DNA of 64,000 nt from Macrostomum lignano (taxonomy: Eukaryota), in NCBI GenBank assembly GCA_002269645.1, contig NIVC01003820.1, positions 11,155 through 75,154 of the forward strand, given 5' to 3'. Below the pieces are notes generated by a model that had not been told where the DNA came from, ran no database searches, and was given only the letters and a program-made list of their open reading frames with translations. Shown here in pieces: positions 2,387 to 55,345 of this stretch. Position 1 is the stretch's first letter; every line of letters starts with the position of its first letter. The position numbers and the translations under genes were made by a program.

Positions 2387-12821
<10,435 letters not shown>

Positions 12822-14842: not shown

Positions 14843-16046
14843 TCACTGCTGCGGACCATAGTAGCCGCCTTCGGTTCGCCAGTCAGGCGCTCCGGTCCCA
14901 CTGGTACCTACTGTCGAGTTTTGATGGTGCGACTGCTGCTGCTGAGGCTGGTTGTTGCTGGTGCCTCCGCTGCCCCTGCCACCCCTGCCACCAGTGAAGA
15001 CGGTCAGAATGAGAAATGCTCCGGAAATCAGGGCGCACAGGAGCGACCAGCCGAGCTTGTCTGAGTGGGTCACGGTTCGAGCAATGCTGGCCGCGATCAG
15101 GCCGCTGATGCCTGGTGGGGAAAGTGAGTTTCGGGAAGTGGCTTGGCAGTTTGGGCTTTGGCGGAGAGTGACGCAATGGGTGAGGCGGAGAGTGATACAG
15201 TGGGTGAGGTGGAGAGTGATACAGTGGGTGAGGCGGAGAGTGACACAGTGGGTGAGGCGGAGAGTGACACAGTGGGTGAGGCGGAGAGTGACACAGTGGG
15301 TGAGGCGGAGAGTGACACAGTGGGTGAGGCGGAGAGTGACACAGTTGGTGAGGCGGAGAGTGACACAGTGGGTGAGGCGGAGAGTGACACAGTGGGTGAG
15401 GCGGAGAGTGACACAGGGGGTGAGGCGGAGAGTGACACAGTTGGTGAGGCGGAGAGTGACACAGTGGGTGAGGCGGAGAGTGACACAGTGGGTGAGGCGG
15501 AGAGTGACACAGTGGGTGAGGCGGAGAGTGACACAGTTGGTGAGGCGGAGAGTGACACAGGGGGTGAGGCGGAGAGTGATACAGTGGGTGAGGTGGAGAG
15601 TGACACAGGGGGTGAGGCGGAGAGTGAAACAGGGGGTGAGGCGGAGAGTGACACGACACAGGGGGTAGGCGAGGAGTGACACAAGAGAGACAAAGATATT
15701 ATATATGGACATATGAGTGACACACAGAGTGCCACAAAGAGTGTGGTGAAGAGTGAAAAGTGGGCCATCTGCGGCCGGCCCAGCCCTCACCTGCCAATAT
15801 CATGCAGCCGGCATCCACAAGCAGCACAATATTATTGCCCTCGAAAATGTCGAGAAAGGTGCAGGCAAACGTGAACGCCAGTCCAATAAAGTAAGTTATT
15901 AAACCGATAATTAAAAAGGCGGTCTTCGCGTCATTCTGTTGAGCGTCGAGCAGGAAGACGTCGTTAGCCGACAGCCAGACAATGAAGCCGATTGAAGACA
16001 GAATGAAGGCCAACCGAAGCCACAGCGGCCGTTCATGGAAGATCAT
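14843..16046 (-). CDS. Small four-transmembrane protein, claudin/PMP22-like, 174 aa
   Basis: Exons 16046-15791 (donor G|GTGAGG) and 15111-14843 (acceptor CCACCAG|), phase 1. Four hydrophobic segments and a Gly/Gln-rich tail. Family assignment from topology only. Confidence 0.7.
15165..15665. repeat. 24-bp minisatellite GTGGGTGAGGCGGAGAGTGACACA
   Basis: About 20 units filling the intron of the four-TM gene. Confidence 0.95.
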
Positions 16047-21450: not shown

Positions 21451-22119
21451 TCTCTCTCTCCACGCCTCTCTTTCGCCCTTTCTTCATCTACCTCACCAAC
21501 TCCCCCCTGTAAGCGCCTGCTGCCTAGTGCGTGGTGGCGCGCATGGCAATGATTTTACTCCTGGTATTGCTTATGCAATGTACATCCAGTGTGCTTTCTC
21601 GCCGAATAGGTTGTCCCCAGGTGGCTGGAGTCCTGCGAAATTTTTGCCTTTTCCAACTTCAAGTAGTCTAAAGACCCCCATCCATCGCAATGCATTGTAC
21701 AAAAAGGCCTGAAAATCAGTATAATATATAAGGAGAAGTGAGCCTCAAAATAAAATTTCATAATTTCGTAGTAGGACGTGCACTGAGTGCCTCACTCTTA
21801 AGCCCCTTTCCTCTGATCAGGCGGCAGATCGGCCGCAGCAGAGGGCCAGCTGTCTCAACTGTCTCTGCGCTGCGTAGCCGCGAGGACGAGGGGAGGTCGC
21901 CGCTCCTTGAGGCCTGCAGCTGGATGCCAGGGGAAGAGATGAAGCTGAAAGAGTGGTTAGGGAGAGAACTGTTGAATTTTTTGAAATTCAGCCATAAAAA
22001 ATATAAAATTTGACTTTACGAGCCGAACAGTCTTCCTTACACTCTATCTCATATTTGCTTAGCACTCCCCCCTACTGGGGGACGAAACTATCATGTCACC
22101 CCGTTCGATCACACTTCAC

Positions 22120-22780
22120 AATGTTCCATCACCCTCTCCGATGTTCCATACCCTCTCCGATGTTCCAGCACCCTCTCCGATGTTCCATCACCCTCTCCGA
22201 TGTTTCATCACCCTCTCCGATGTTCCATCACCCTCTCCGATGTTTCATCACCCCTCTCCGATGTCCCAGCACCCTCTCCGATGTTGCATCACCCTCTCCG
22301 ATGTTCCAGCACCCTCTCCGATGTTCCAGCACCCTCTCCGATGTTTCATCACCCCTCTCCGATGTCCCAGCACCCTCTCCGATGTTCCATCACCCTCTCC
22401 GATGTCCCAGCACCCTCTCCGATGTTCCAGCACCCTCTCCGATGTTCCAGCACCCTCTCCGATGTTTCATCACCCTCTCCGATGTTCCATCACCCTGTCC
22501 GATGTTCCATCACCCTGTCCGATGTTCCATCACCCTCTCCGATGTTTCATCACCCTCTCCGATGTTTCATCACCCCTCTCCGATGTTTCATCACCCTCTC
22601 CGATGTTCCATCACCCTCTCCGATGTTTCATCACCCCTCTCCGATGTCCCAGCACCCTCTCCGATGTTCCAGCACCCTCTCCGATGATCCAGCACCCTCT
22701 CCGATGATCCATCAACCTCTACGATGTTCCATCACCCTCTCCGATGTTCCATCACCCTGTCCGATGTTCCATCACTCTCA
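22120..22780. repeat. 20-21-bp minisatellite CACCCTCTCCGATGTTCCAT
   Basis: About 32 units; all overlapping ORFs are repeat translations. Confidence 0.95.
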
Positions 22781-23584
22781 TCCTCATTCTTTCTCATTCC
22801 TCTTCATAAACTTTGAGAACCTTTTTGGCCAAGCGAAATTTTTGTAATAAACAAGGCAAAATGTTTTATTCGAGCCTGGAAATTCCCCCGCCCTTCCTGC
22901 ATCCGGTTCTATCCAAGGAACCCTAACCGAAGCTCGGGATGGACCGCCTACTTTACAAATTGATATTTTAGAACTAAACTGGTATTTCTGATCACCGCAG
23001 CGAATTTATGTAAATACAAATACATCGCCACACTCTGGAATACGTTGGTATCAGTACTCTTGGGACTCGAGCAGTGCAAAATCCCAACGGATCCTATCCT
23101 GTACACCAGCGCAAATACCAGTCAAACTTGTTATTGCTTCTGACTTTGCTGTCTACTAAGCCTAAAGTGGGTGGAGATTAAAAAGAATAATTCTCTACAG
23201 TGAAATTGCGTGCGAGATCGACTTCTACTCTATAAAAGACTCCAACTCCTCAATGGCAATTTCCGATCTCATTTCAAACAGCCTCTCTCCGTGAGCAGAA
23301 CTCCATTGCTGCCGCGTCTCCCTACCCGGGAGGCTTTAACCCGAGGCTCCTTTCCTGCCTGCAGCTCATTCATAACTCTTCCTCTGCTTCTGAGAGCTGC
23401 CTTGTACCAGCGCCGCTCTTTGCTTGCAAACTGGAGAGTCGGGGGCCTTGCTATCGATCTGAGACATCGAGAGGGCGGGCAGCCGCTTTGGCTGAGGCGA
23501 ATATTGAAAGTGATAAGAATGCAGCCATGCATGGAGATGGGCACAGTGGGGGAGCAGGGACCACTGGATGTTACACACATTCCT

Positions 23585-24035
<451 letters not shown>

Positions 24036-24408
24036 TGGTAAAGAGGCATGAAAAGCGGCTGTTCGGATCCCAGAGGCACACTCACTCAAATAGCGTGCTA
24101 AACAGCAATTGTTTCTTCAAATTTCGATCGTCATCATGCCAATTGAAAGGGAAAGCGGTTATGCTTTTTGGTAACTGGTAGTAGAGCTCGGGTTGCTTAA
24201 CTAATTTTTTAGCTCCAGTCCGCATCGCAGTAATTTCGAGTAAAGTATTCGATCTAGAAAAGCAATCAAATTATAAAAAAAATGATCAGGGAAGTTTTGC
24301 TTTTTACGAACTATCAAACAAATAAACACTTAGTTTGAATAGTTTTTCAAATTTTAGTTTCTTTTAAAAAACATTTTGGCGCCAATTTAAACAAATAATC
24401 AAACATAC

Positions 24409-26013: not shown

Positions 26014-29000
26014 ACCAAGGGGCTTTGGCACCAAGGGGCTTTGGCACCAAGGGGCTTTAGCACCAAGGGGCTTTAGCACCAAGGGGCTTTAGCACCAAGG
26101 GGCTTTAGCACCAAGGGGCTTTAGCACCAAGGGGCGCCAGCACCAAGGGGCGCCAGCACCAAGGGGCGCCAGCACCAAGGGGCTTTAGCACCAAGGGGCT
26201 TTAGCACCAAGGGGCTTTAGCACCAAGGGGCTTTAGCACCAAGGGGCTTTAGCACCAAGGGCTTTAGCACCAAGGGGCTTTAGCACCAAGGGGCTTTAGC
26301 ACCAAGGGGCTTTAGCACCAAGGGGCTTTAGCACCAAGGGGCTTTAGCACCAAGGGGCTTTAGCACCAAGGGGCTTTAGCACCAAGGGGCTTTAGCACCA
26401 AGGGGCTTTAGCACCAAGGGCTTTAGCACCAAGGGGCTTTAGCACCAAGGGGCTTTAGCACCAAGGGGCTTTAGCACCAAGGGGCTTTAGCACCAAGGGG
26501 CTTTAGCACCAAGGGGCTTTAGCACCAAGGGGCGCCAGCACCAAGGGCGCCAGCACCAAGGGGCTTTAGCACCAAGGGGCTTTAGCACCAAGGGGCTTTA
26601 GCACCAAGGGGCTTTAGCACCAAGGGGCTTTAGCACCAAGGGGCGCCAGCACCAAGGGGCTTTAGCACCAAGGGGCTTTAGCACCAAGGGGCTTTAGCAC
26701 CAAGGGGCTTTAGCACCAAGGGGCTTTAGCACCAAGGGGCTTTAGCACCAAGGGGCTTTAGCACCAAGGGCTTTAGCACCAAGGGGCTTTAGCACCAAGG
26801 GGCTTTAGCACCAAGGGGCGCCAGCACCAAGGGGCTTTAGCACCAAGGGGCTTTAGCACCAAGGGGCTTTAGCACCAAGGGGCTTTAGCACCAAGGGGCT
26901 TTAGCACCAAGGGGCTTTAGCACCAAGGGGCTTTAGCACCAAGGGGCTTTAGCACCAAGGGGCGCCAGCACCAAGGGGCTTTAGCACCAAGGGGCTTTAG
27001 CACCAAGGGGCGCCAGCACCAAGGGGCTTTAGCACCAAGGGGCTTTAGCACCAAGGGGCTTTAGCACCAAGGGGCGCCAGCACCAAGGGGCTTTAGCACC
27101 AAGGGGCTTTAGCACCAAGGGGCTTTAGCACCAAGGGGCTTTAGCACCAAGGGGCTTTAGCACCAAGGGGCTTTAGCACCAAGGGGCTTTAGCACCAAGG
27201 GGCGCCAGCACCAAGGGGCGCCAGCACCAAGGGGCGCCAGCACCAAGGGGCGCCAGCACCAAGGGGCTTTAGCACCAAGGGGCTTTAGCACCAAGGGGCT
27301 TTAGCACCAAGGGGCTTTAGCACCAAGGGGCTTTAGCACCAAGGGGCTTTAGCACCAAGGGGCTTTAGCACCAAGGGGCTTTAGCACCAAGGGGCTTTAG
27401 CACCAAGGGGCTTTAGCACCAAGGGGCTTTAGCACCAAGGGGCTTTAGCACCAAGGGGCTTTAGCACCAAGGGGCTTTAGCACCAAGGGGCTTTAGCACC
27501 AAGGGGCTTTAGCACCAAGGGGCTTTAGCACCAAGGGGCTTTAGCACCAAGGGGCTTTAGCACCAAGGGGCTTTAGCACCAAGGGGCTTTAGCACCAAGG
27601 GGCGCCAGCACCAAGGGGCGCCAGCACCAAGGGGCTTTAGCACCAAGGGCGCCAGCACCAAGGGCTTTAGCACCAAGGGGCTTTAGCACCAAGGGGCTTT
27701 AGCACCAAGGGGCTTTAGCACCAAGGGGCTTTAGCACCAAGGGGCTTTAGCACCAAGGGGCGCCAGCACCAAGGGGCGCCAGCACCAAGGGGCTTTAGCA
27801 CCAAGGGGCTTTAGCACCAAGGGGCTTTAGCACCAAGGGGCTTTAGCACCAAGGGGCTTTAGCACCAAGGGGCTTTAGCACCAAGGGGCTTTAGCACCAA
27901 GGGGCTTTAGCACCAAGGGGCTTTAGCACCAAGGGGCTTTAGCACCAAGGGGCTTTAGCACCAAGGGGCTTTAGCACCAAGGGGCTTTAGCACCAAGGGG
28001 CTTTAGCACCAAGGGGCTTTAGCACCAAGGGGCGCCAGCACCAAGGGGCGCCAGCACCAAGGGGCGCCAGCACCAAGGGGCGCCAGCACCAAGGGGCGCC
28101 AGCACCAAGGGCGCCAGCACCAAGGGGCTTTAGCACCAAGGGGCTTTAGCACCAAGGGGCTTTAGCACCAAGGGGCGCCAGCACCAAGGGGCTTTAGCAC
28201 CAAGGGGCGCCAGCACCAAGGGGCGCCAGCACCAAGGGGCTTTAGCACCAAGGGGCTTTAGCACCAAGGGGCTTTAGCACCAAGGGGCGCCAGCACCAAG
28301 GGGCGCCAGCACCAAGGGGCGCCAGCACCAAGGGGCTTTAGCACCAAGGGGCGCCAGCACCAAGGGGCTTTAGCACCAAGGGGCTTTAGCACCAAGGGGC
28401 TTTAGCACCAAGGGGCTTTAGCACCAAGGGGCTTTAGCACCAAGGGGCTTTAGCACCAAGGGGCTTTAGCACCAAGGGGCTTTAGCACCAAGGGGCTTTA
28501 GCACCAAGGGGCTTTAGCACCAAGGGGCTTTAGCACCAAGGGGCTTTAGCACCAAGGGGCTTTAGCACCAAGGGGCGCCAGCACCAAGGGGCTTTAGCAC
28601 CAAGGGGCTTTAGCACCAAGGGGCTTTAGCACCAAGGGGCTTTAGCACCAAGGGCTTTAGCACCAAGGGGCTTTAGCACCAAGGGCTTTAGCACCAAGGG
28701 GCTTTAGCACCAAGGGGCGCCAGCACCAAGGGGCTTTAGCACCAAGGGGCGCCAGCACCAAGGGGCTTTAGCACCAAGGGGCTTTAGCACCAAGGGGCTT
28801 TAGCACCAAGGGGCTTTAGCACCAAGGGGCTTTAGCACCAAGGGGCTTTAGCACCAAGGGGCTTTAGCACCAAGGGGCTTTAGCACCAAGGGGCGCCAGC
28901 ACCAAGGGGCTTTAGCACCAAGGGGCGCCAGCACCAAGGGGCTTTAGCACCAAGGGGCTTTAGCACCAAGGGGCTTTAGCACCAAGGGGCTTTAGCACCA

Positions 29001-30179
29001 AGGGGCGCCAGCACCAAGGGGCGCCAGCACCAAGGGGCGCCAGCACCAAGGGGCGCCAGCACCAAGGGGCTTTAGCACCAAGGGGCTTTAGCACCAAGGG
29101 GCTTTAGCACCAAGGGGCTTTAGCACCAAGGGGCTTTAGCACCAAGGGGCTTTAGCACCAAGGGGCTTTAGCACCAAGGGGCGCCAGCACCAAGGGGCTT
29201 TAGCACCAAGGGGCGCCAGCACCAAGGGGCTTTAGCACCAAGGGGCTTTAGCACCAAGGGGCGCCAGCACCAAGGGGCTTTAGCACCAAGGGGCTTTAGC
29301 ACCAAGGGGCTTTAGCACCAAGGGGCTTTAGCACCAAGGGGCTTTAGCACCAAGGGGCGCCAGCACCAAGGGGCGCCAGCACCAAGGGGCGCCAGCACCA
29401 AGGGCGCCAGCACCAAGGGGCGCCAGCACCAAGGGGCTTTAGCACCAAGGGGCTTTAGCACCAAGGGGCTTTAGCACCAAGGGGCTTTAGCACCAAGGGG
29501 CTTTAGCACCAAGGGGCTTTAGCACCAAGGGGCTTTAGCACCAAGGGGCGCCAGCACCAAGGGGCGCCAGCACCAAGGGGCTTTAGCACCAAGGGGCTTT
29601 AGCACCAAGGGGCTTTAGCACCAAGGGGCTTTAGCACCAAGGGGCTTTAGCACCAAGGGGCTTTAGCACCAAGGGGCTTTAGCACCAAGGGGCTTTAGCA
29701 CCAAGGGGCTTTAGCACCAAGGGGCTTTAGCACCAAGGGGCTTTAGCACCAAGGGGCGCCAGCACCAAGGGGCTTTAGCACCAAGGGGCTTTAGCACCAA
29801 GGGGCTTTAGCACCAAGGGGCGCCAGCACCAAGGGGCGCCAGCACCAAGGGGCGCCAGCACCAAGGGGCTTTAGCACCAAGGGGCTTTAGCACCAAGGGG
29901 CTTTAGCACCAAGGGGCTTTAGCACCAAGGGGCTTTAGCACCAAGGGGCTTTAGCACCAAGGGGCTTTAGCACCAAGGGGCTTTAGCACCAAGGGGCTTT
30001 AGCACCAAGGGGCTTTAGCACCAAGGGGCTTTAGCACCAAGGGGCTTTAGCACCAAGGGGCTTTAGCACCAAGGGGCTTTAGCACCAAGGGGCTTTAGCA
30101 CCAAGGGGCGCCAGCACCAAGGGGCGCCAGCACCAAGGGGCGCCAGCACCAAGGGGCGCCAGAACCAAGGGGCTTTAGC
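26014..30179. repeat. 4.2-kb 16-bp minisatellite with two interspersed variants (ACCAAGGGGCTTTAGC / ACCAAGGGGCGCCAGC)
   Basis: About 260 units, with occasional 15-bp units missing one G. Confidence 0.98.
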
Positions 30180-31306: not shown

Positions 31307-31852
31307 ATGAATTGCCTGCCGATTGCAGAGTTGGTGATGCATTACACACTAATCTGTGTGAGCACAGTCTGCTTGTGCATAGAAATCCAGCTCAATGAGA
31401 TATTCGATGGACTCAACTCTGAGTACAGCAGATACCTCGGCTACATCTGCCCCGTTATGGTGACGCTACTGAGCTTACTCAGGCTAACTGTCATTATCTT
31501 CAAGAATTGTTGCAAAAGAAAGAACAAGAAAAAATCTGGAAGCGGCTGCAGCTGGTGGTGCTTGTTGATGCAGCTTCTGGCTTGGCTCGCCTGCGCCGCT
31601 GGCTTCTTGGCCATGACCGTGCTCATCACCATCGGCCTGCCGCACATTCAAGGCGTCGTCTCGTTGGCGTCATCAGCGACGGTTTCAGACTGTCCAGGAA
31701 TCAACTTGGCCATTCGACTGTGGCGATTTCAAGCGGCAGTGGCCGGAGTGGCGGCTGGCGAGTGTCTGGCTCTCTTCGGCCTGAGAACTGCAGGGCTGGT
31801 GGCGGCCCCGAGACCAAGGGAGGAGGATGGCGTCATTTTCCAAGAAACATGA
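31307..31852 (+). CDS. Intronless four-transmembrane protein, 181 aa, unknown family
   Basis: ATG-to-TGA ORF in AT-rich flanks; four hydrophobic segments with a Cys/Lys-rich loop (KNCCKRKNKKK). Confidence 0.65.
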   Translation: MNCLPIAELVMHYTLICVSTVCLCIEIQLNEIFDGLNSEYSRYLGYICPVMVTLLSLLRLTVIIFKNCCKRKNKKKSGSGCSWWCLLMQLLAWLACAAGFLAMTVLITIGLPHIQGVVSLASSATVSDCPGINLAIRLWRFQAAVAGVAAGECLALFGLRTAGLVAAPRPREEDGVIFQET

Positions 31853-32744
31853 TGGTCGTTTAGACCGGGAGCGGCAAAAAAGCAAATCCCTGTGTAAAAT
31901 TTGTTTGTTACAGTTAATGTTTGCAGTGATGTTATAAGTAGTTCTTACCGAATCTTGTAAAATACAAACGTTTAATCCATGCTTATTTGTTTGACTAAGT
32001 GCCTGTGACTTTTGCTGGCCAAAAGTTACAAACGAGGATTTTAATGGCTCAGTAAAATTTTTATAGCTTTAGTAAATTAGTTCTATTCTTATGTAATTTA
32101 ACTTATCTACAGACATTATAACTAATGATATGCTATATTTTAATCGTTACGAGTTACAAAGATAATAATACAAATTGTACATAAATTTAGAAATACTATA
32201 TTTATAATTATCATGTTGAATTATTAGGGTACTAAACTATTAGCGCTAGACTATAAAATGTAAATTATTATGTAATAAAACAACTGGCATACAGTATAAT
32301 GGATAGCACTTGTAAAAAAAAATACTAATTCCAATACACTTAAAATAGGAAGTCAGGATTTTAGAATTAATGCTCAAAACTGACGGGTCACAATAGGAAT
32401 TTGCCCTGCAAATGCCCAAAAGCAGAACATTTCAAACAAACGCCGTAGATAACAGCTGTGGCTCTACGATCTGCTGTCTGACTTTAGACATCTCTCTTAG
32501 CTCGTAAAGTGTACACGAGTACTTTATAATCGCTTCGATAGCCAGTCAATTGACGTGCTAAAGTTTATCTGAAAAAACTGTCAAAATTTTGTCTATGGCA
32601 CAGAGAAGGCGAATCTTTTCTGCGTTGATGTCAAATTTGAAGTCAAAAGAAGAGAGATCCCGGCCCAACTTCTTTGTTAAAGCTGCTTTAAAAGAAATTA
32701 AAGGTTGCTCTAGACGACTTTTGATTATAATAAAGACAGGAAAG

Positions 32745-34789
32745 ATGGACCAGCAAGAGGACTCAGAAGCGACAGTCGATCTGAAGCAAACATTCTGCTT
32801 CGACTTTCTATCCGGGCCAGAAACTACGGAGGCGGCCAGTCACAGCAATCAGAGCAACCGCACCGACATCATGAAGAAGTACTTAGTCTACATGGAGCTA
32901 CCCAAGATTAGAGTGAGTGTCTGATATCTCAACTAATCTACTGGTAGTAGTTTAGATTTAACAAAAACTTTTGGTATTAAAAAGATTTTCATCACTGTTC
33001 TTACCAAGCCATTTTTATCTACACTGTACAGATTGGAGACTACAGAAAGTCGAGCTGCGTCTCCGGCAACGTGATCCGCTTTCACTTTCTGCTTCGTATC
33101 GCTCGCGATGAAGAGAATATGGTGCTGCGACTGCAACCCATCAAGGCCTACAAAACGCCCGTGGTGAACTTCGCCGTCATCCATCGGCCTTTCCTTGACG
33201 ATGACAGCGCTAAAGGTCCAATTCCAAAGAGTCCCGGTGTGCGCAGCCCGCTGATCAACTACGAAGGCGAAGAGACCAGTCCAGGAGTGCCCGACAGTCG
33301 TACCGATGATATCATTGAAGACTTTCAAAGCGACAAAGCTCAAGCGCCTAGTGTCGAAGATGAACAAAAGCAACAACAGGGACAGAGGCGATCAAGCGAT
33401 GCTAGCATCGGTAAATCTCAACCTAAACTGAAAGAAAGCCCGAAGAGGCGGTCCAGTCAGGCGAGTATCGACAAAGACAAAGTACAGCAGAAATCCTCAG
33501 AGAGCCCGAAGAGGCGGTCCAGTCAGGCGAGTATCGACAAAGACAAAGTACAGCAGAAATCCTCCGAGAGCCCGAAGAGGCGGTCCAGTCAGGCGAGTAT
33601 CGACAAAGACAAAGTACAGCAGAAATCCTCCGAGAGCCCGAAGAGGCGGTCCAGTCAGGCGAGTATCGACAAAGACAAAGTACAGCAGAAATCCTCCGAG
33701 AGCCCGAAGAGGCGGTCTAGTCAGGCCAGTATCGACAATGCCAAAGTACAGCAGAAATCCTCCGAGAGCCCGAAGAGGCGGTCCAGTCAGGCGAGTATCG
33801 ACAAAGCTCAACAAGAGCAGGCAAAGAGTCCCCAGAAACATTCGAGTTCAGAAAAGACCCAGACCCAGCCCTCAGAGAGTCCCAAGCGACGATCTAGTCA
33901 GGCAAGCACCGACGAGCAGCAGCGGTTAGAAGTAGAAGCGCCCGTGAGGCGGCCAAGCCAGACAAGTCTCGACCAGTCTAAAATGGCGATCGTTGATCAG
34001 AGACGCTCGAGCCAATCAAGCACAGGTGCTCAGCAGCAGCGATTTGAAGTTGAGGCGCCCGTTAGGCGGCCAAGCCAAGCTAGCGAAGATCTGCTTCAGC
34101 AGGCCGGGGCAGCAAGGCAGCAAGAGAGTCAAACCAGTTCGGAAAATCGTCAGTCTCAGGTACCGGAGACGTCTCAACAGAGACCTGCCCAGGGCATCTT
34201 GGCTGAGTCTCCAAAAAAGGCCCGACTTGAGATCGAGTCACCGACACCTCGTCAGGACATTTCCCCAGCTAGACTTCTCTCAGACGATAATGCAACCACT
34301 CGCACAGATACGACCGGTCGTCAAAAGCAGCGCCGTCCAAAGAAGTATTTTGTCTACTGCGAGATACCGAAGATCCTCCTTGGCGACTATCGCAACTCCA
34401 GCGTCATCTGCTCTGAGATTATCCACGCGCATTTCCTGATGAAAATTGCCAAAGATGAAGAAAGCAACCAGCCGCGTCTGAAACCGATCAAGCGGTATCA
34501 CCGGCCAAAAGTGAACTTTGCAGTCATTCACCGGTCGCTACTGGTTGACGACGACGCAATCGGGCCGATTCCTCGCAGCCCGAACGTTCGGTCACCGATG
34601 ATCCGCGAGGACGAGCCCGAGGAGGAAGACGACGTTCCGCCAGACAACGTGATGCACGCCACAATGGGCTTCTGCTACGGTCGCCTGCCCCGCTCTAAGT
34701 ACGAGCTGGTCACGCAGTGGTCGTTGGTCAATGGAGACGGTGGTGGACCGCCACTTCCTGAGCTCGTGCTCAGCAAGGCCGATGTGTGA
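32745..34789 (+). CDS. Uncharacterised 641-aa protein with two copies of an unrecognised domain of about 90 aa flanking a Ser/Gln/Lys-rich repeat linker
   Basis: Exon 32745-32912 (donor AGA|GTGAGT) plus exon 33032-34789 (acceptor TGTACAG|), phase 0; internal homology is visible by eye. An upstream in-frame ATG near 32595 is possible. Confidence 0.8.
33437..33806 (+). repeat. 66-bp coding tandem repeat (ESPKRRSSQASIDKDKVQQKSS), 5 full copies and 1 partial
   Basis: In-frame units at 33437, 33503, 33569, 33635, 33701 and 33767. Confidence 0.93.
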
Positions 34790-35381
34790 TTTTGTCAAGT
34801 GCCATTCGGCGTGCTTAGCGGTGAAATCAATAACCACGGCGTTCATTTTTGTTCAGCGTCAGTCATCGAGCGACCGATTTTTCAGTTTTACTTCTTTGGA
34901 ACACTTCAAACAATTTTTTCGTCTTTACAGACAAGTTTTTTTCGGCCTGCGCACTGCAGGTGCAATCAATCGCTCAGAAATTTCCTCTGCAATTTATACT
35001 AATCCTCTTTTACTACCTGTGCCCATACATTGTTTAGACAGAAGCGACCACTAAATTAAACCGGATTTTTTATTTCAACTATACACACTTGCTGAAACAA
35101 AATAAGTCGTTGATGCATCATTTTCACCTAAATAGGCCTTGCACTTTCTATTCCGTCAATTTTTAACCAGCCTTGATTACTTAGATTATTTAAATTACTT
35201 ATTAGCCGATAAGTAGCTCGGATAATTAGGTCCGTAAACTACTATTTTTTAGATCAATCCGATATTCTATTCGATAAATTCTTTATTCGATAAGATTGAA
35301 TAGCTACAAAGAAAACTTTAAATTACAGCGTGTCAATGTCCACATGGACTTGATTATACATCATTCTAGGAAATCGTAATA

Positions 35382-36636
35382 TTGGGTTGTAGCAAAAGTT
35401 TCGAGCGTTTTCTTTAAACTTCTAGCGCTTTCTCTAGAGAAATTTCTGGAATGTTCTATGGGGGTATACGAGTATAAGAGTGACCAGTGCGCACTACCGT
35501 ATCCACTTCATATGCTCAACCTTCAGCTACAATGGTTACGAAACAACACGATCAACGTCACCTCATTCGAGCATCTTTACTTTTCTGCTTCAAGCTGGGC
35601 AACTCAGCAGCTGAGGTGCATCGCAAGTTATGTCAGGCATGTGCCGAAGACTTTCTGAGCGATCAACGCTGCCATGTCTGGTTTGCGCAGTTCAAGAAGG
35701 GTACGACGAATTACTCGAAGGCAAGTAGCTCTCCGGTTACCCACCTGAGCTCGATATCCAGCAGCTTGCCCTGCTTTTCGAAGCTGAGCCATATCTTACA
35801 ACACGTGAAATTGCAGAGTACTTTAAAGTCTCTGCCATGACCACCGACCGCGGCCTTCATCAACTCGGCAAAGTGCACAAGCTTGGTCGATGGGTTCCAC
35901 ACGAACTTTCCCGTGAGAACAAGGATCAGCGCATCATCACATGCACCCAACTCCTGTCCTATCGTCGCAATCCAGGATCGCTCGATACTGGTTACTGGCG
36001 ATGAGGAGTGGGTGGCCAGTTTCAACACCACGCGCAAGCGCCAGTGGCTTTGCATGGCGGATCAGCCACAGCCAACGCCCAAACCTGATCTACACCAAAA
36101 GAAGGTCATGATGTGAGTCTGGTGGAATTCCAGTGGAATCGTCCACTGGGAGCTCCTGCCTCGTAACACCAGCATCACTGCCGATGTCTACTGTGAGCAG
36201 CTGGACAGACTGCATCAGGCTTTTGTCAAGCAGCAGGGCGCTGGCGCTAAAATTCGATTTCTTCACGACAACGCCCGACCTCGTGTGGCGAAGAAGACAC
36301 TACAGAAGCGGCTCGAGCTAGGCTGGGAAGTGATGCCCCACCCTCCCTACTCGCCTGATCTTGCGCCATCTGACTACCATCTGTTCTGCTCTATGCAGAG
36401 CCACATAAATGGTGTGACGTTAAAAGACGAGGAGGAGGTGACAGCCTGGCTCGAGCAACACTTCAAGTCGCTGCCGCCTGAGTTCTTTAAGAAGGGCATC
36501 CACGATCTCATCGCCAGATGGCAACAGGTCATTGATCAGGATGGTGATTATATCCTGGAATAGAAACTGTTAGGACTGGAAAAATGAATTCAAAGTTTGA
36601 GTGCAGAAACGCTCAGAACTTTTGTTACAACAACAA
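35382..36636 (+). mobile_element. Mariner (DD34D) DNA transposon, about 1255 bp, with a pseudogenised transposase
   Basis: Imperfect TIRs TTGGGTTGTAGCAAAAGTTTCGAGCGTTTT and AAACGCTCAGAACTTTTGTTACAACAACAA with TA on both flanks. Transposase 35532-36563 carries WVPHEL, TGDEEW, HDNARP and YSPDLAPSDY; two frameshifts and a TGA at about 36113. Confidence 0.95.
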
Positions 36637-38822: not shown

Positions 38823-38857
38823 GAGTTCCACTGAGGACAGGAAGATTGCGATTGGAT

Positions 38858-40190
<1,333 letters not shown>

Positions 40191-41435
40191 AATAAACTAT
40201 TCATACTGTACAGACTCACCTTCTAATTAGGAGTTTTCAGTTTTACGAATATATCAGCTGGTTTTGGTGAAAGTCACTGCGAACAGCTACAGCTTGATCC
40301 TCTGTTCAGTGCCTTATATAGCAACAAGCTACCAGTATTCGAGCTTGAGCTCCCATTGGCTGCTCGGAAGGGCCCTGGCCCGTGTCTAATTCGAGATTCA
40401 GTCTCGAATGGATCACGCAGCGAGTTTTAGCCCCAAAATTTGAATAAATATTTCAGAGCAAGCAGCTCGCGAATTTGACCCAGTGACACCCCAAATATGG
40501 CCCTTGAAATTCTTGAGGCCTCATCACTTGAAACCCCTCGAATTCCCACGGGATTGAGGAGCAGAACAAAAAGTTTATCCAGAGTGAAACTTTGACTCCG
40601 TCACTGTGGAGCTGACGTATTTCACCGATACGTGGAATCTTGAATGCGTTTTGTTCGTTTGCATAATTAATTTTGTGGGCATGTCAAGCGTGCTCAGCCT
40701 GGGCTGAGTTGGCTCAAATGTGGCTCTGGATGGCTAATCGAGTTTCTGGAGCGAGACTCGGACTGTGTGGCAACCAAAGCCAGCGAAGCTGGAATGGCGA
40801 TGCGGCACAAATGTGTCGCGAATTGCGAAGGCCCTGCTGGTTGGCTTTGATTGACCTATAGGGATACGACCAAGGAGCGGTAGAAGTTGCAGTTGTATCG
40901 CGACTTAAGTAACACCCATGATCAATGGAAAATTGTTTAAAGGCTCAACTAAAACTTTCATTGGTCCTTTGGCGTGACCGTGGATAGACCTACAACACCT
41001 TCGAAGGAGGACAACGTCCCACAATCAGCGTGGAGGCAATTCATTAAGGAAACCACGCCACATGTTGACTTCATGTTACTGATAATCAATCACCGCAATA
41101 AACTGTTTTCAAATTTGTTTGACACACAAAAATAAGATGGTTCCAAAATCATGTTTCCTCCCTGAGAGAAACAGAGCGCTTATTACAAAAGTGGATGACT
41201 AGTACAAGTTTTCTCTCGCTCAAGCTGTCTCTTCGCACGCAATTCGTCAGTTTAGAACTTAATTTATGCGAGCTATAACCACCTTATTTTGAGACAGCAC
41301 TTCTCTGCAAGTCGCTTTTAAACCTAAATGATACTGCAGACTAATTTCGACTATTTTAATTGGCTTAGCCAAAAAATTGTTTAAAAGACTTTTGTCAATC
41401 AGGGACGTGGTAAGGGGTAGGGCTACCAAAACTAT

Positions 41436-43825: not shown

Positions 43826-47509
<3,684 letters not shown>

Positions 47510-50862: not shown

Positions 50863-53800
50863 ATGTCAAGCCAGCTTGATAAAAGTTCAGTTGCATTGGT
50901 TGCCAAGTGCAAACCTGGATTATGGAGCAGGTAAATAAATTATAAATTATTTTTTTCAAATTAGTTTTAATTGTCGTGTATTGCTCTTAGGTTAGAAGTA
51001 AGATGTCCTTTGATTCTCAGACTGGGCTATCATCATCCTCTTAAATCCTCAGCTGCTTTGCAAACCTCCCATATCCTCAGTTGCTATGCCAGCCTCCCAG
51101 ATCCTCAGTTGCTGTGCCAGCCTCCCAAATCCTCAGTTGCTGGGCCAGCCTCCCAGAGTGTCAGTTGCTGGGCCAGCCTCCCAGATCCTCAGTTGCTGGG
51201 CCAGCCTCCCAGATTATCAGTTGCTGGGCCAGCCTCCCAGATCCTCAGTTGCTGGGCCAGCCTCCCAGAGTGTCAGTTGCTGGGCCAGCCTCCCAAATCC
51301 TCAGTTGCTGGGCCAGCCTCCCAGAGTGTCAGTTGCTGGGCCAGCCTCCCAGATCCTCAGTTGCTTGGCCAGCCTCCCAGATCATCAGTTGCTGGGCCAG
51401 CCTCCCAGATCCTCAGTTGCTGAGCCAACCTCCCAGATCTTCAGTTGCTGGGCCAGCCTCCCAGATCCTCAGTTGCTGAGCCAACCTCCCAGATCCTCAG
51501 TTGCTGGCCCAGCCTCCCAGATCCTCAGTTGCTGGGCCAACCTCCCAGATCCTCAGTTGCTGGGCCATCGCCGATCTTCAAGTTTAGTTACTTATTTTTT
51601 CACATGTATTTTATAATTTTTACGAGGAAACGGCAGGAGCAAGAGTAACTATACCTTAGTGTTGAGTGAAAAAATGCTTCGTCATCTGATTAGTAGTGCT
51701 TCCATAATTCCATACTTATTTTCACCCCTCAGACAGGAACGCAAGCAGTGGATGGGGTCCCTGCTGATTGGGTCGGCCTGCCTGTACCTGAGTCGCACCA
51801 TCATGCCGCTGTGCAACGTGCCAATTAGCACCGAGCTCAACTGGAGCAAAAGTACATCCGGTATGGTTCTTGGTGCATTCTTCTGGGGCTACACCTGTAC
51901 TCAGTTTCTAGGCGGCTATTTAGCTGATCGAGTCGGCGGCGAGTTCGTTGTTACCATGGCAGCATTTGGCTGGGCCGCTGTCACCATGGTACATCCACTG
52001 TTGCCATGGCTATCGGATGATCCAAGCGTTCTACTGTCGGCTTTCCTATTGTGCCGCGTGCTCACTGGCGCCTGCCAGGGCTTTCACTATCCCGGCATGA
52101 GCAGCCTCATGGCTCATCGGGTGCAGCTCAAAGAGCGAGCCTACACCTGGAGCGTCGGCAGCTGTGGAGCGCATGTTGGGTGAGCTGCGTAAATATCAAG
52201 ATATGTCACTTGTAATTAAAATTTTGAAAAAAGCAGAGCGTCTACTCTTTTTTCCAGTAGTTTGTCTGCGCAGTGTAACTAAAATTTACATCTGAAATTT
52301 TCTTTCCATTCTCCGGGTTTGCGGCCTCAGGAGTACACTCGTATTGGGGTTAAGAATGAACTACAAGCATTCAACTCGATGTGTTAAAAACTTTAACATG
52401 GTGTATGAGTATATCAGTCATTGTAGTGACACCTCAGTCATTAGAGTCATTAAAGTGACACCTTAGTCATTAGAGTAGTGAAACCTCAGTCATTAGAGTA
52501 GTGACACCTCAGTCATTAGAGTAGTGACATCTCAGTCATTAGACTGACACCTTAGTCATTAGACTGACACATTAGTCATTAGAGTGACACCTCAGTCATT
52601 AGAGTGACACCTCAGTCATTAAAGTGACACCTCAGTCATTAGAGTGACACCTCAGTCGTTAGAGTAAAAGACTGACCCCTTAGTCTTTAGAGTAGTGACA
52701 CCTCAGTCATTAGAGTAGTGACACCTCAGTCATTAGAGTAGTGACACCTCAGTCATTAGAGTAGTGACACCTCAGTCATTAGAGTAGTGACACCTCAGTC
52801 ATTAGAGTAGTGACACCTCAGTCATTAGAGTAGTGACACCTCAGTCAGTAGAGTAGTGACACCTCAGTCATTAGAGTAGTGACACCTCAGTCATTAGAGT
52901 AGTGATATCTCAGTCATTAGAGTGACAACTCAGTCATTAGAGTGACACCTCAGTCATTAGAGTGACACCTCAGTCATTAAAGTGACACCTCAGTCATTAG
53001 AGTAAAAGACTGACCCCTTAGTCTTTAGAGTAGTGAAACCTCAGTCATTAGAGTAGTGACACCTCAGTCATTAGAGTAGTGACACCTCAGTCATTAGAGT
53101 AGTGGCACCTCAGTCAGTAGAGTAGTGACACCTCAGTCATTAGAGTAGTGACACCTCAGTCATTAGAGTAGTGATATCTCAGTCATTAGAGTAGTGACAC
53201 CTCAGTCAGTAGAGTAGTGATATCTCAGTCATTAGAGTAGTGACACCTCAGTCAGTAGAGTAGTGACACCTCAGTCATTAGAGTAGTGATATCTCAGTCA
53301 TTAGAGTGACACCTCAGTCATTAGAGTAAAAGACTGACCCCTAAGTCATTAGAGTAGTGACACCTCAGTCAGTAGAGTAGTGACACCTCAGTCAGTAGAG
53401 TAGTGACACCTCAGTCATTAGAGTAGTGATATCTCAGTCATTAGAGTGACACCTCAGTCATTAGAGTAAAAGACTGACCCCTAAGTCATTAGAGTAGTGA
53501 CACCTCAGTCAGTAGAGTAGTGACACCTCAGTCAGTAGAGTAGTGACACCTCAGTCATTAGAGTAGTGATATCTCAGTCATTAGAGTGACACCTCAGTCA
53601 TTAGAGTAAAAGACTGACCCCTTAGTCTTTAGAGTAGTGACACCTCAGTCATTAGAGTAGTGACACCTCAGTCATTAGAGTAGTGACACCTCAGTCATTA
53701 GAGTAGTGACACCTCAGTCATTAGAGTAGTGACACCTCAGTCATTAGAGTAGTGACACCTCAGTCATTAGAGTAGTGACACCTCAGTCATTAGAGTAGTG

Positions 53801-55345
53801 ACACCTCAGTCATTAGAGTAGTGATATCTCAGTCATTAGACTGACCCCTTAGTCATTAGAGTGACACTTTAGTCATTAGAGTAACACCTCAGTCATTAGA
53901 GTGTCACCTCAGTAATTAGCATCAACCCTGCACCTGCCGCACTGCTCAGCACGCTACTCTGCGGCAGCGTTGGCTCTCTCATAGTCGGCAGCTACGGATG
54001 GCGCGCCGCCTTCATAGTGATTGGTCTGTGCGGCCTCACCTGGGCGTTTGTTGTCAGATCTACTCTGCTCCGGCGTCGGCAGAGGGTGATCGACTACGCC
54101 GTCACCGCCGATCAGCCTGTCGGATCTTCGACCTCGGGCGGTCAGCAGGCTGCTGTCGCCTCCCCAATTGATCAGCACCAGCTGCTTCTAGAAGACACTA
54201 TGCAGCAGAAAGAGAGAGAAGCTGACAAGTTAGCTAGAAAGTTGAGCACCGAGTCGAAAGCAGTTGCCGCTGCCGCCGCTGGCGAGCGCGAAGGTGTGCC
54301 CTGGGGCGCCGTGGTCAGGTCGCCAGCGTTCTGGTGAGTAAACTGAAAGCATTTGTCAGTGTCAATCGAGGAGTTTCATGCCCTCAAAAGCAGTTTCATG
54401 ACCTTCCAAGCAGTTCCATGACCTTCCAAGCAGTTTCATAACCCCAAAAGCAGTTTCATAACCCCACAAGCAGTTTCATAACCCCACAAGCAGTTTCATA
54501 ACCCCACAAGCAGTTTCATAACCCCACAAGTAGTTTCATAACCCCACAAGCAGTTTCATAACCCCACAAGCAGTTTCATAACCTCACAAGTAAATTCAAG
54601 ACCTCAAAAGCAGTTTAATGACCTCACAAGTGGTTTAATGACCTCACAAGTGGTTTCATGACCTCACAAGCAATTTTATGACCTCAGCAAGTTGTTTTTA
54701 AAGAATCTTAACAAATTTTTGCCTAATGTAAAACTTAATTGAATGCTCACAAAATGCCACCCCACCCCGCATCGCAGGGCTATGATCGTTGGTCACTTCG
54801 CCCACGCCAATTCGTTCTTCATCCTGCTCAGCTGGATTCCCACCTATTTTCACGACAACTTCCCCGACGCCCGAGCCTGGGTATTCAACGTCGTACCCTG
54901 GATGGTGACCATTCCCGCGTCGCTGGGGTCCGGACTGCTGGCGGATTGGTTGCTAAGGAAACGATTGAGCGTCACCACTGTTCGCAAGCTGCTGGAAGGC
55001 ACCAGCCTGTTGCTAACCGCCCTGTTCCTCTACCTGCTGTGCCACACCCACTCCTACGCCCAGTCTCTGGCCTGCATGGCGTTGGCAATTTGCGCCTGCG
55101 GCTTTCACAATTCCGGAATTCTGGTGAATCCGCACGACCTCCTGCCGGCGCACGGCGGCGCCCTGTTCGGCGTTATGAACATCTTCGGCGCCGTGCCAGG
55201 CTTTGTAGGCGTCTACATGGTCGGGCACATCCTGGAGACCACTAAGAGCTGGCCGGCTGTGTTTCTCAACACGGCCGCAATCTGCGTTGTTGGCGCCGTT
55301 GTTTATCTGGCGTTCGGCTCGGGCAAACGGATTCGGTTGCGGTAG
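50863..55345 (+). CDS. SLC17A9: Vesicular nucleotide transporter (SLC17 family, MFS), 488 aa
   Basis: Exons 50863-50930, 51733-52179, 53950-54333 and 54778-55345, phase-consistent GT-AG. Motifs WSRQERKQW, FFWGYTCTQFLGGYLADRVGGE, QGFHYP, WIPTYFHDNFP and GFHNSGILVNPHDL. Confidence 0.92.
51065..51570. repeat. 28-bp minisatellite GATCCTCAGTTGCTGGGCCAGCCTCCCA
   Basis: About 18 units in SLC17A9 intron 1. Confidence 0.95.
52430..53915. repeat. 20/23-bp minisatellite GTGACACCTCAGTCATTAGA(GTA)
   Basis: About 65 units with recurring higher-order blocks, in SLC17A9 intron 2. Confidence 0.96.
54395..54685. repeat. 20-bp minisatellite CCCCACAAGCAGTTTCATAA
   Basis: Degenerate array in SLC17A9 intron 3. 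Confidence 0.9.

What the first reader, a model, noticed from the sequence alone, without database searches (positions are those of the whole stretch)
32745..34789. Protein with a tandemly duplicated unrecognised domain joined by a multi-site phospho-motif linker
Seen: copy 1 KKYLVYMELPKIRIGDYRKSSCVSGNVIRFHFLLRIARDEENMVLRLQPIKAYKTPVVNFAVIHRPFLDDDSAKGPIPKSPGVRSPLI and copy 2 KKYFVYCEIPKILLGDYRNSSVICSEIIHAHFLMKIAKDEESNQPRLKPIKRYHRPKVNFAVIHRSLLVDDDAIGPIPRSPNVRSPMI align almost without gaps. Only copy 1 has an intron. Between them lie more than 300 low-complexity residues with six SPKRRSSQAS units plus further RRSS and RRPS motifs. Known: S-P-x-R/K is the CDK consensus and R-R-x-S the PKA consensus. 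Inference: a two-headed scaffold or cross-linker whose spacing or charge is tuned by phosphorylation; I do not recognise the domain.
Basis: partly seen in the sequence, partly recalled or inferred. Interest (0 to 1): 0.7.

Follow-up and report, generated by a model that had tools for sequence, protein, structure and literature searches.

The report
Flatworm orphan protein with duplicated domain
This is a real, intact gene of the flatworm Macrostomum lignano that encodes two copies of a domain found nowhere outside that genus, joined by a young serine-rich repeat linker; its function is unknown, and the proposed control by phosphorylation is plausible but untested.

Summary
A two-exon gene (32745-32912 and 33032-34789, + strand) encodes 641 aa. 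It has two 88-aa copies, 55% identical (E 2e-37), and a 361-aa low-complexity linker. The linker holds a 66-bp tandem array of 5.6 units at 97% identity.

The window is Macrostomum lignano, 95-99% identical to two GenBank contigs. The gene is annotated there as hypothetical proteins Mlig032993 and Mlig015641.

The domain matches nothing in Pfam or in PDB sequences. A profile search of 1.84 billion proteins found only Macrostomum proteins. AlphaFold failed (pLDDT 35), so the fold is unknown.

Paralogues (Mlig032245 and one transcript-like contig) keep the two-copy layout and the copy-1 intron at the same position. Their spacer is short and rich in Glu/Arg. The domains are under strong purifying selection (dN/dS 0.07-0.2).

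The repeat array is young and varies in number, 6 units against 4. Even so, a core motif RR[S/P]S[Q/D]xS recurs 11 times and is kept through saturated synonymous change.

The "two-headed, phospho-tuned" reading is partly supported: the architecture is shown, but the kinases and any phosphorylation are inferred. This is an ordinary lineage-restricted orphan family of modest interest.

The parts
32745..32912 (+). Exon 1 (aa 1-56): variable acidic N-terminus and the first 13 residues of domain copy 1
   Evidence: ATG in a good context (A at -3, G at +4), donor GTGAGT at 32913. The start aligns with MAQQ of paralogue P0003.
32913..33031 (+). Intron, 119 nt, phase 0, GT..AG, inside copy 1
   Evidence: Same position, phase and length in paralogue Mlig032245 (L003/L004). 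The junction is read through without an intron in transcript-like contig L001.
33032..34789 (+). Exon 2 (aa 57-641 plus stop)
   Evidence: Open frame to TGA at 34787-34789. GenBank model P0001 ends at the same point.
32874..33256 (+). Domain copy 1 (aa 44-131, split by the intron), net charge about +8, ends in the motif GPIPKSPGVRSPLI
   Evidence: BLASTP between the copies gives E 2e-37. tblastn coordinates are. dN/dS against the paralogues is low. Beta strands are predicted.
33257..33373 (+). Acidic stretch after copy 1 (aa 132-170, net -9), with a conserved E-D-F motif
33374..34339 (+). Basic Ser/Gln-rich low-complexity spacer (net about +23 to +26) with 11 RR[S/P]S[Q/D]xS cores and 10 S/T-P-x-K/R sites
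   Evidence: AlphaFold predicts no secondary structure here.
33437..33806 (+). 66-bp (22-aa) tandem array, 5.6 units, 97% identical: SPKRRSSQASIDKDKVQQKSSE
   Evidence: TRF; units listed. There are 4 units instead of 6 in the syntenic GenBank contig L002.
33908..34102 (+). Older diverged 117-bp duplication carrying (Q)QQR[LF]EVEAPVRRPSQ[TA]S twice, with an RRSSQSS core between the two
34340..34603 (+). Domain copy 2 (aa 493-580), no intron, preceded by the basic cluster RQKQRRP, net charge about +7
34604..34654 (+). Acidic stretch after copy 2 (net -9)
34655..34786 (+). Conserved C-terminal element (aa 598-641; GF.YG...KY.L..QWSLV...PELVLSK), present only after copy 2
   Evidence: Invariant columns in alignment A2. 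Strands are predicted.

Best explanation
This is an intact, expressed-type protein-coding gene of the free-living flatworm Macrostomum lignano. It is a near-identical copy of BOX15_Mlig032993 / Mlig015641. It belongs to a small protein family seen so far only in Macrostomum.

Shown:
- The layout runs: variable N-terminus, basic beta-rich module D1, acidic patch, variable spacer, basic cluster, basic module D2, acidic patch, conserved 44-aa C-terminal element.
- There is no signal peptide or membrane segment, so the protein is intracellular.
- D1 and D2 arose by a duplication older than the split of the paralogues. Each has kept its own identity under strong purifying selection.
- In this paralogue the spacer was rebuilt by tandem-repeat expansion into a 300-aa basic Ser/Gln-rich tract, presumably disordered. 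Its length varies among gene copies. Its recurring core RR[S/P]S[Q/D]xS is under selection.

Inferred (about 25-30% likely as stated):
- The two non-identical basic modules act as a bivalent binder of a polyanionic or repeated partner. Candidates are nucleic acid or chromatin, acidic membrane or a polymer.
- The spacer sets their reach.
- Phosphorylation at about 22 basophilic and proline-directed serines would turn the spacer from about +23 to net negative. It would then, like the two acidic patches, mask the basic modules or change compaction. That is an electrostatic on/off switch.
For: Gene model and species:
- Searches show 95-99% identity and synteny with M. lignano contigs NIVC01001484.1 and NIVC01001896.1. 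The same upstream small gene and downstream TRAF gene are present.

Duplication and architecture:
- The two copies match at E 2e-37.
- The family layout is conserved in P0002, P0003 and P0004.
- The intron position, phase and length are conserved and the intron is absent from the 1467-nt transcript-like contig L001.

Selection:
- Domain dN/dS is 0.07-0.2 with saturated dS.
- Window against L002 shows 20 synonymous and 6 non-synonymous codon differences. There are none at all in D1 or D2, against 2.5-4% substitutions in the intron and flanks.

Orphan status:
- all found nothing outside Macrostomum.

Motif constraint:
- In the 7-codon core, pS is 0.91 and pN 0.11. In the flanks pN is 0.55-0.63.

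Charge and location:
- Only beta strands are predicted in D1, D2 and the tail, and none in the spacer.
Against: - There is no direct evidence for expression of this very locus, for phosphorylation, for any ligand or for a cellular location.
- AlphaFold models are unusable (mean pLDDT 35), so even the fold and the independence of D1 and D2 are unknown.
- The paralogues lack the motif array, so the phospho-switch cannot be the family's core mechanism.
- The array's youth and its variation in unit number also fit a loosely constrained spacer.
- Motif instances were picked with the pattern RR[SP]S, so only the +1 Q and +3 S are unbiased evidence. Two of the instances (aa 362 and 401) are themselves a duplicate pair.
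- One near-identical genomic copy (L005) carries a 1-bp deletion that breaks the frame. This is either an assembly error or a dying copy.
Confidence: 0.45

Rival explanations
1. The linker is simply a fast-evolving, loosely constrained spacer: a coding minisatellite. The apparent kinase motifs are by-products of repeat expansion and composition, and phosphorylation plays no regulatory role. The family's function lies only in D1, D2 and the C-terminal element.
For: Units are 97% identical. The unit number differs between gene copies, 6 against 4. All 5 non-synonymous differences outside the tail fall in the linker. The paralogues use an unrelated Glu/Arg-rich spacer. The window is full of micro- and minisatellites.
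Against: The core RRxSQxS recurs in at least four to five diverged versions outside the young array. These have different codons but the same residues (pN 0.11 against 0.55-0.63 in the flanks). About 0.7 RRxS are expected by composition, against 11 seen (one search counts; the expectation is my own arithmetic).
Confidence: 0.3
2. D1 and D2 are not two heads. They are two halves of one pseudo-symmetric globular domain that pack against each other, and the linker is a long inserted loop, as in split domains.
For: D1 and D2 have kept copy-specific invariant residues since before the paralogue split, as expected if they form a fixed heterotypic pair. Every family member has exactly one D1 and one D2 in the same order. 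Fission-yeast Duc1 is a precedent for a domain bisected by a disordered insert (PMC11449445).
Against: There is no structural evidence either way, because the AlphaFold models are unusable. Each copy is long enough (88 aa, 4-5 predicted strands) to fold alone. Both copies are strongly basic (+8 and +7), which disfavours direct packing unless the acidic patches intervene.
Confidence: 0.2
3. It is a chromatin or nucleic-acid-binding protein, for example one specific to sperm or spermatids. The S-P-K-R-R units would act like the SPKK minor-groove motifs of sea-urchin sperm histones and would be released by CDK phosphorylation. This is a more specific version of the main explanation.
For: There are seven SPKRR units. 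The modules and spacer are basic. Basic clusters resembling a nuclear localisation signal lie before D2, KKRKK in the paralogues and RQKQRRPKK here. There are 17 SQ/TQ sites. The SPKK motif is established knowledge (Suzuki 1989), recalled here and not tested.
Against: There is no histone fold, HMG box or any known DNA- or RNA-binding domain. No expression data could be retrieved. The paralogues lack SPKK-like units.
Confidence: 0.15
4. The domain is a very divergent member of a catalogued family. UniRef names paralogue P0003 'DUF1769-domain-containing protein'.
For: The UniRef100 name of A0A1I8H7A5. Duc1's DUF1769 is also split by a disordered region and has basic patches.
Against: hmmscan against Pfam-A finds no DUF1769 or any other domain at E<=10 in the window protein, in each copy alone, or in P0001, P0002, P0003 and P0005. 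The precomputed Pfam fields are empty. The nearly identical P0005 is named 'NFACT-R_1 domain-containing', so the names are inconsistent. They most likely stem from weak hits to the charged low-complexity spacer. The profile search of 1.84 billion proteins found no fungal protein.
Confidence: 0.05

Closest known systems
Macrostomum lignano hypothetical proteins BOX15_Mlig032993g1 (PAA67425.1) and BOX15_Mlig015641g1
   Same: Same gene: 99% identical over aligned residues, and syntenic.
   Different: PAA67425.1 is a partial model with a spurious N-terminal read-through and only 3+1 SPKRRSSQAS units; its own contig encodes 4+1 and the window 6+1. Mlig015641g1 is a truncated model, because its contig has a 1-bp deletion. 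None of these is characterised.
Paralogues BOX15_Mlig032245g1-3 (PAA55697.1 and others) and the Logan transcript-like contig from SRR30276804
   Same: Same D1-spacer-D2-tail architecture, same intron site, 50-53% identity overall and 60-77% within the domains.
   Different: Short spacer of about 90-130 aa, rich in Glu/Arg/Gln and probably helical. No tandem array and no RRxSQxS series.
Pfam PF08588 DUF1769 / fission-yeast Duc1
   Same: A conserved domain in two parts separated by a disordered region, with basic patches. The name is attached to a paralogue by UniRef.
   Different: No sequence match. Duc1's two parts are not reported to be copies of each other. The family is described as fungal only (PMC11449445).
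SPKK-type repeats of sperm histone tails, and multi-site phosphorylated repeat linkers of the Nopp140/treacle or RS-domain kind (recalled knowledge)
   Same: Tandem short basic Ser-Pro units that match the CDK consensus, alternating with acidic or Ser-rich stretches. Net charge would be switchable by phosphorylation.
   Different: No histone fold, no RRM. The unit is 22 aa with its own core RRSSQAS. No experimental link exists.
HMGB1-like layout: two basic boxes plus an acidic tail (analogy only)
   Same: Two homologous basic modules, each followed by an acidic tract that could fold back on them.
   Different: No HMG box. The modules are predicted to be all-beta. No homology.

Membership tests
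Pfam DUF1769 (PF08588, Duc1) | Match to the Pfam profile at or above its gathering score | tested here: not met
   No hit at E<=10 for the window protein, each copy alone, P0001, P0002, P0003 or P0005. Precomputed Pfam fields are empty.
Pfam NFACT-R_1 (PF05670; UniRef name of P0005) | Match to the Pfam profile | tested here: not met
   No hit at E<=10.
Any family with a solved structure | Sequence-profile match to a PDB chain, or fold match of a confident model | tested here: inconclusive
   By profile, only a chance hit (E 0.86-0.88). The AlphaFold models have pLDDT 35, so Foldseek (best E 2.4) says nothing.
Macrostomum D1-spacer-D2 family (defined here) | Two copies of the 88-aa domain in the order D1 then D2 | tested here: met
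   Present in all members.
Macrostomum D1-spacer-D2 family (defined here) | GPIP[KR]SP..[KR]SP tail on each copy | tested here: met
   Invariant columns G-P-I-P, S-P and S-P across all six copies.
Macrostomum D1-spacer-D2 family (defined here) | Conserved C-terminal QWSLV...PELVLSK element | tested here: met
   Invariant in the window protein, P0001, P0002, P0003 and P0004.
Macrostomum D1-spacer-D2 family (defined here) | Phase-0 intron after PK[IV][KR] of D1 | tested here: met
   Same position, phase and length (119 nt) in the window gene and in Mlig032245.
CDK substrate motif | [S/T]-P-x-[K/R] | tested here: met
   10 matches, all in the linker. A sequence match only; phosphorylation cannot be tested here.
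PKA substrate motif | R-R-x-[S/T] followed by a hydrophobic residue | tested here: not met
   R-R-x-S occurs 11 times, but the +1 residue is Q (10 times) or D (once), never hydrophobic. It fits basophilic kinases in general.
SQ/TQ cluster domain (ATM/ATR-type targets) | At least 3 SQ/TQ within 100 residues | tested here: met
   16 SQ/TQ lie between aa 185 and 437. A sequence criterion only.
Phosphoprotein (actual modification) | Observed phosphorylation of the linker serines | not testable with these tools
   No proteomic data are accessible.

The most novel reading that the evidence does not exclude
The 88-aa module is a new fold that arose within macrostomid flatworms. The protein is a bivalent binder of chromatin, RNA or membrane, whose activity is switched by multi-site phosphorylation of a repeat-expanded linker. 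Repeat number would then act as a heritable tuning knob, varying between the gene copies of this recently duplicated genome.
Probability: 0.12. Interest if true: 0.55.

Novelty: categorically new. Interest (0 to 1): 0.35.

Why it matters
If the reading holds, it would give three things. First, a clean example of a lineage-restricted domain family with a conserved two-module layout, in a flatworm model that has transgenesis and RNAi. Second, a natural series of spacers (short Glu/Arg-rich against a long phospho-motif array with 4 or 6 units) for asking how linker length and charge tune a bivalent protein. Third, a case of a short linear motif kept by selection inside a rapidly turning-over coding minisatellite.

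It does not bear on any long-standing open question. Orphan genes with repeats are common in this genome, so the value is local unless a function is found. 'Categorically new' here means only that the domain belongs to no catalogued family. The fold could still turn out to be a known one.

Tried and rejected
- **Pfam, NCBIfam and PDB-sequence scans** of the whole protein, each copy and the paralogues found nothing.
- **Three word-indexed homologue searches.** The domain-only query found nothing, not even the known identical protein, which shows the limits of that index. The others found only Macrostomum proteins.
- **Exhaustive profile search of 1.84 billion representatives** returned only P0001 and P0003.
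- **Metagenome scan with the domain profile** gave 172 pattern matches, none confirmed.
- **AlphaFold2**, on the full length with 5 sequences and on copy 2 plus tail with 6 sequences, gave pLDDT 35 both times.
- **Foldseek against PDB** on the poor model gave a best E of 2.4 and was disregarded. The BFVD library was not searched because the model is unusable.
- **DUF1769 lead.** I tried to obtain a Duc1 sequence from the supplement of PMC11449445 for a profile comparison, but the alignment is an image.
- **Expression.** The gene ids are absent from the main text of all papers and from the held, truncated supplements of PMC5816591 and PMC5730564. The SRA run of the Logan contig is not mentioned in any paper.
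- **Rfam and tRNA scans of the window** were empty.
- **Rejected: pseudogene or annotation artefact.** The frame is intact, the intron is conserved, and dN/dS is far below 1.
- **Rejected: secreted or membrane protein.** There is no hydrophobic segment.
- **Rejected: FFAT motif at the conserved E-D-F.** On inspection the residues after the F do not fit the consensus.
Full report
**1. What is in the sequence**

Reading 32000-35600 and splicing in silico gives a two-exon gene on the + strand.
- Exon 1 is 32745-32912.
- The intron is 32913-33031, 119 nt, running GTGAGT...ACAG, phase 0.
- Exon 2 is 33032-34789.
- The product is 641 aa.
- The coding sequence is 54% G+C, against 46% for the window.

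BLASTP between the two halves gives 55% identity over 105 residues with one 2-residue gap, E 2e-37. Only copy 1 is interrupted by the intron, between PKIR and IGDY.

Tandem Repeats Finder reports a 66-bp unit repeated 5.6 times at 97% identity at 33437-33806. At the protein level there are seven SPKRRSSQAS units, six in the array and one diverged. There are 11 RRxS and 10 S/T-P-x-K/R sites.

**2. Whose gene it is**

The first homologue search returned a Macrostomum lignano hypothetical protein, PAA67425.1 (BOX15_Mlig032993g1). It is 99% identical over aligned columns.
- Its contig (L002, NIVC01001484.1) is collinear with the window at 86-99% identity. It has the same small upstream gene and the same downstream TRAF/MATH gene.
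- A second contig (L005, NIVC01001896.1) is 99.3% identical over 5.1 kb.

The window is therefore M. lignano. The gene exists in at least three near-identical genomic copies, which may be haplotypes, products of the recent genome duplication, or different assemblies.
- The window and L005 have six tandem units. L002 has four.
- L005 has a 1-bp deletion in a CCC run (window 33881) that breaks the frame. That explains the truncated GenBank model P0006.
- The window copy is intact.

**3. The family**

Two further relatives share the layout.
- The Mlig032245 group (P0003, P0004, P0005) is 369-370 aa, apart from the N-terminally truncated 317-aa model P0005.
- P0002 (397 aa) is encoded on a 1467-nt contig assembled from sequencing run SRR30276804.

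All members have D1, a spacer, D2 and a conserved C-terminal element (GF.YG...KY.L..QWSLV...PELVLSK) in the same order.
- Copy 1 of one protein is closer to copy 1 of another (63-70%) than to its own copy 2 (51-54%). The internal duplication therefore predates the paralogues.
- The intron in copy 1 sits at the same codon boundary, in the same phase and with the same 119-nt length in Mlig032245.
- The intron is absent from L001, which reads straight through the junction and ends with an AATAAA signal. L001 therefore looks like a spliced mRNA.
- This is evidence that the family is transcribed. It is not direct evidence for this locus.

The start codon at 32745 is supported by alignment with MAQQ of P0003. 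An upstream in-frame ATG at 32596 with no intervening stop cannot be excluded as an alternative start.

**4. Is it under selection?**

Nei-Gojobori estimates on the domains give pN 0.06-0.35 with pS 0.5-0.8, which is saturated. Where computable, dN/dS is 0.07-0.21.

Between the window and L002:
- 20 codons differ synonymously and 6 non-synonymously.
- D1 and D2 (490 nt of exon 2) carry no substitution at all.
- The intron and flanks differ at 2.5-4.2%, with indels.

The gene is real and constrained.

**5. Is the domain known?**

It is not known by any test available here.
- Pfam-A gives no hit at E<=10 for the protein, for either copy alone, or for the paralogues. NCBIfam gives none.
- Profile searches of all PDB chain sequences give one chance hit at E 0.86-0.88.
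- An exhaustive hmmsearch with a six-copy profile against 1.84 billion representative proteins returned only the two Macrostomum representatives.
- A metagenome scan confirmed nothing.

UniRef calls P0003 'DUF1769-domain-containing protein' and the nearly identical P0005 'NFACT-R_1 domain-containing protein'. Neither name is reproduced by hmmscan, and the two disagree with each other. I take them to be artefacts of weak hits to the charged spacer; that is inference.

According to PMC11449445, DUF1769 is fungal and in Duc1 is split by a disordered insert. This resembles the layout here but does not establish membership.

AlphaFold2 failed twice, with mean pLDDT 35. The only usable output is that strands, and no helices, are predicted at equivalent places in both copies and in the tail, and nothing is predicted in the spacer. 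Foldseek on that model is meaningless (best E 2.4).

Caveat: the protein collections clearly do not hold the many Macrostomum transcriptomes. 'Restricted to Macrostomum' therefore means absent from all other annotated proteomes, including other flatworms. It does not describe the distribution within the genus.

**6. The linker**

In the paralogues the spacer is 90-130 aa of Glu/Arg/Gln-rich sequence, ending in a basic cluster (KKRKK) just before D2. In this gene it is 361 aa and rich in Ser, Gln, Arg and Lys.

It has at least three layers.
- The young 66-bp array.
- An older 117-bp duplication carrying EVEAPVRRPSQ[TA]S.
- Isolated cores.

Listing all RR[SP]S sites with their codons shows that the conserved unit is RR[S/P]S[Q/D]xS.
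- The diverged instances use different codons for the same residues: AGG, CGA and AGA for Arg; TCC, TCA, TCT and TCG for Ser; CAG and CAA for Gln.
- Over six distinct versions the 7-codon core has pS 0.91 and pN 0.11. The seven codons on either side have pN 0.55-0.63.

Two caveats apply.
- The first four residues were the search pattern, so only the +1 Q (5 of 6) and the +3 S (6 of 6) are unbiased.
- Two instances are a duplicate pair.

Even so, the motif looks selected.

Which kinase would act cannot be read from the sequence.
- The serine of RRxS is followed by Q or D, not by the hydrophobic residue preferred by PKA.
- The same serine is an S-Q site, and there are 16 SQ/TQ within 250 residues.
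- The +3 serine would suit priming-dependent kinases.
- SPKR fits the CDK consensus and resembles the SPKK DNA-binding motif.

These last points are recalled knowledge, not tests.

**7. Charge anatomy and likely mechanism**

| Segment | Net charge |
|---|---|
| N-terminus | -7 |
| D1 | +8 |
| Acidic patch after D1 | -9 |
| Spacer core | +23 |
| Basic cluster before D2 | +3 |
| D2 | +7 |
| Acidic patch after D2 | -9 |
| C-terminal element | 0 |

There is no hydrophobic stretch that could be a signal peptide or membrane span; the maximum 19-residue Kyte-Doolittle mean is 0.9. The protein is therefore intracellular.

It has two basic modules, each followed by an acidic tract. The spacer has about 22 candidate phospho-serines, enough to change its sign when modified.

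The explanation I favour is a bivalent binder of a polyanionic or repeated partner, with an electrostatic switch in the spacer.
- I give the architecture and gene status about 0.9.
- I give the mechanism about 0.25-0.3.

The rivals are:
- a neutral spacer without regulation (0.3);
- D1 and D2 as two halves of one split domain (0.2);
- a specifically chromatin- or sperm-nuclear role (0.15, a sub-case of the main explanation);
- hidden membership of DUF1769 or another known family (0.05).

**8. Verdict**

The 'two-headed' layout is a conserved family trait. The 'phospho-tuned linker' is specific to this paralogue; it is supported by motif conservation, but there is no experimental evidence for it.

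The family belongs to no catalogued kind. Lineage-restricted genes with repeat-expanded disordered regions are common in this genome, and nothing here addresses a standing question. Interest is 0.35.

Noticed in passing
L005 (NIVC01001896.1), equivalent to window 33881: A near-identical genomic copy of the gene has a 1-bp deletion in a CCC run that shifts the frame. GenBank therefore annotates only the C-terminal 268 aa (Mlig015641g1). It could be an assembly error or a decaying duplicate.
   Followed up: partly
L002 10001-12068 against protein P0001: The GenBank model PAA67425.1 has one 22-aa repeat unit fewer than its own contig encodes (3+1 against 4+1 units). It also starts with a read-through of the 5' region without a Met. 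The annotation of this gene is unreliable in the repeat.
   Followed up: partly
window 32596-32744: An upstream ATG is in frame with the start codon with no stop between them; it would add 50 aa (MAQRRRIFSALMSNLK...). The paralogue alignment favours 32745 as the start, and L005 has a 1-bp indel in this stretch.
   Followed up: partly
window 35487-36116 (+): A degenerate Mos1/mariner transposase remnant (HTH_48 at E 7e-15, Transposase_1 at E 9e-6), broken over several frames, lies 0.7 kb downstream of the gene.
   Followed up: partly
window 26014-30179: A satellite array of about 4 kb with a 16-bp register lies upstream of the gene. It is much shorter (about 1.5 kb) in L005 and about 0.45 kb in L002.
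   Followed up: no
window 4840-6795, 8682-9860, 14843-15790, 22010-22850, 23270-24090, 38846-40192: There are many long micro- and minisatellite arrays, which create spurious long ORFs in several frames (for example LSIY and RQTD repeats).
   Followed up: no
window 31307-31852 (+): A 181-aa hydrophobic ORF with no family (weak Tweety hit, E 0.009) is syntenic with a 196-aa gene model upstream of Mlig032993 in L002.
   Followed up: no
window 45114-45440, 51659-52183, 54743-55345 (+), 57318-57779 (-), 3170-4493 (+): Neighbouring genes: a TRAF-type zinc-finger gene (syntenic in L002), two exons of an MFS transporter, an exon of mitochondrial ribosomal protein DAP3, and a retrotransposon gag/aspartyl-protease fragment.
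   Followed up: partly
P0003 and P0005 (UniRef100_A0A1I8H7A5 and A0A1I8HIQ9): Two almost identical paralogue entries carry different automatic names (DUF1769 against NFACT-R_1). Neither is reproduced by hmmscan, so they are probably mis-namings driven by low-complexity sequence.
   Followed up: yes
The word-indexed protein search did not retrieve the identical GenBank protein when queried with the 152-aa copy 2 plus tail alone. Negative results from that tool with short queries should not be trusted.
   Followed up: no
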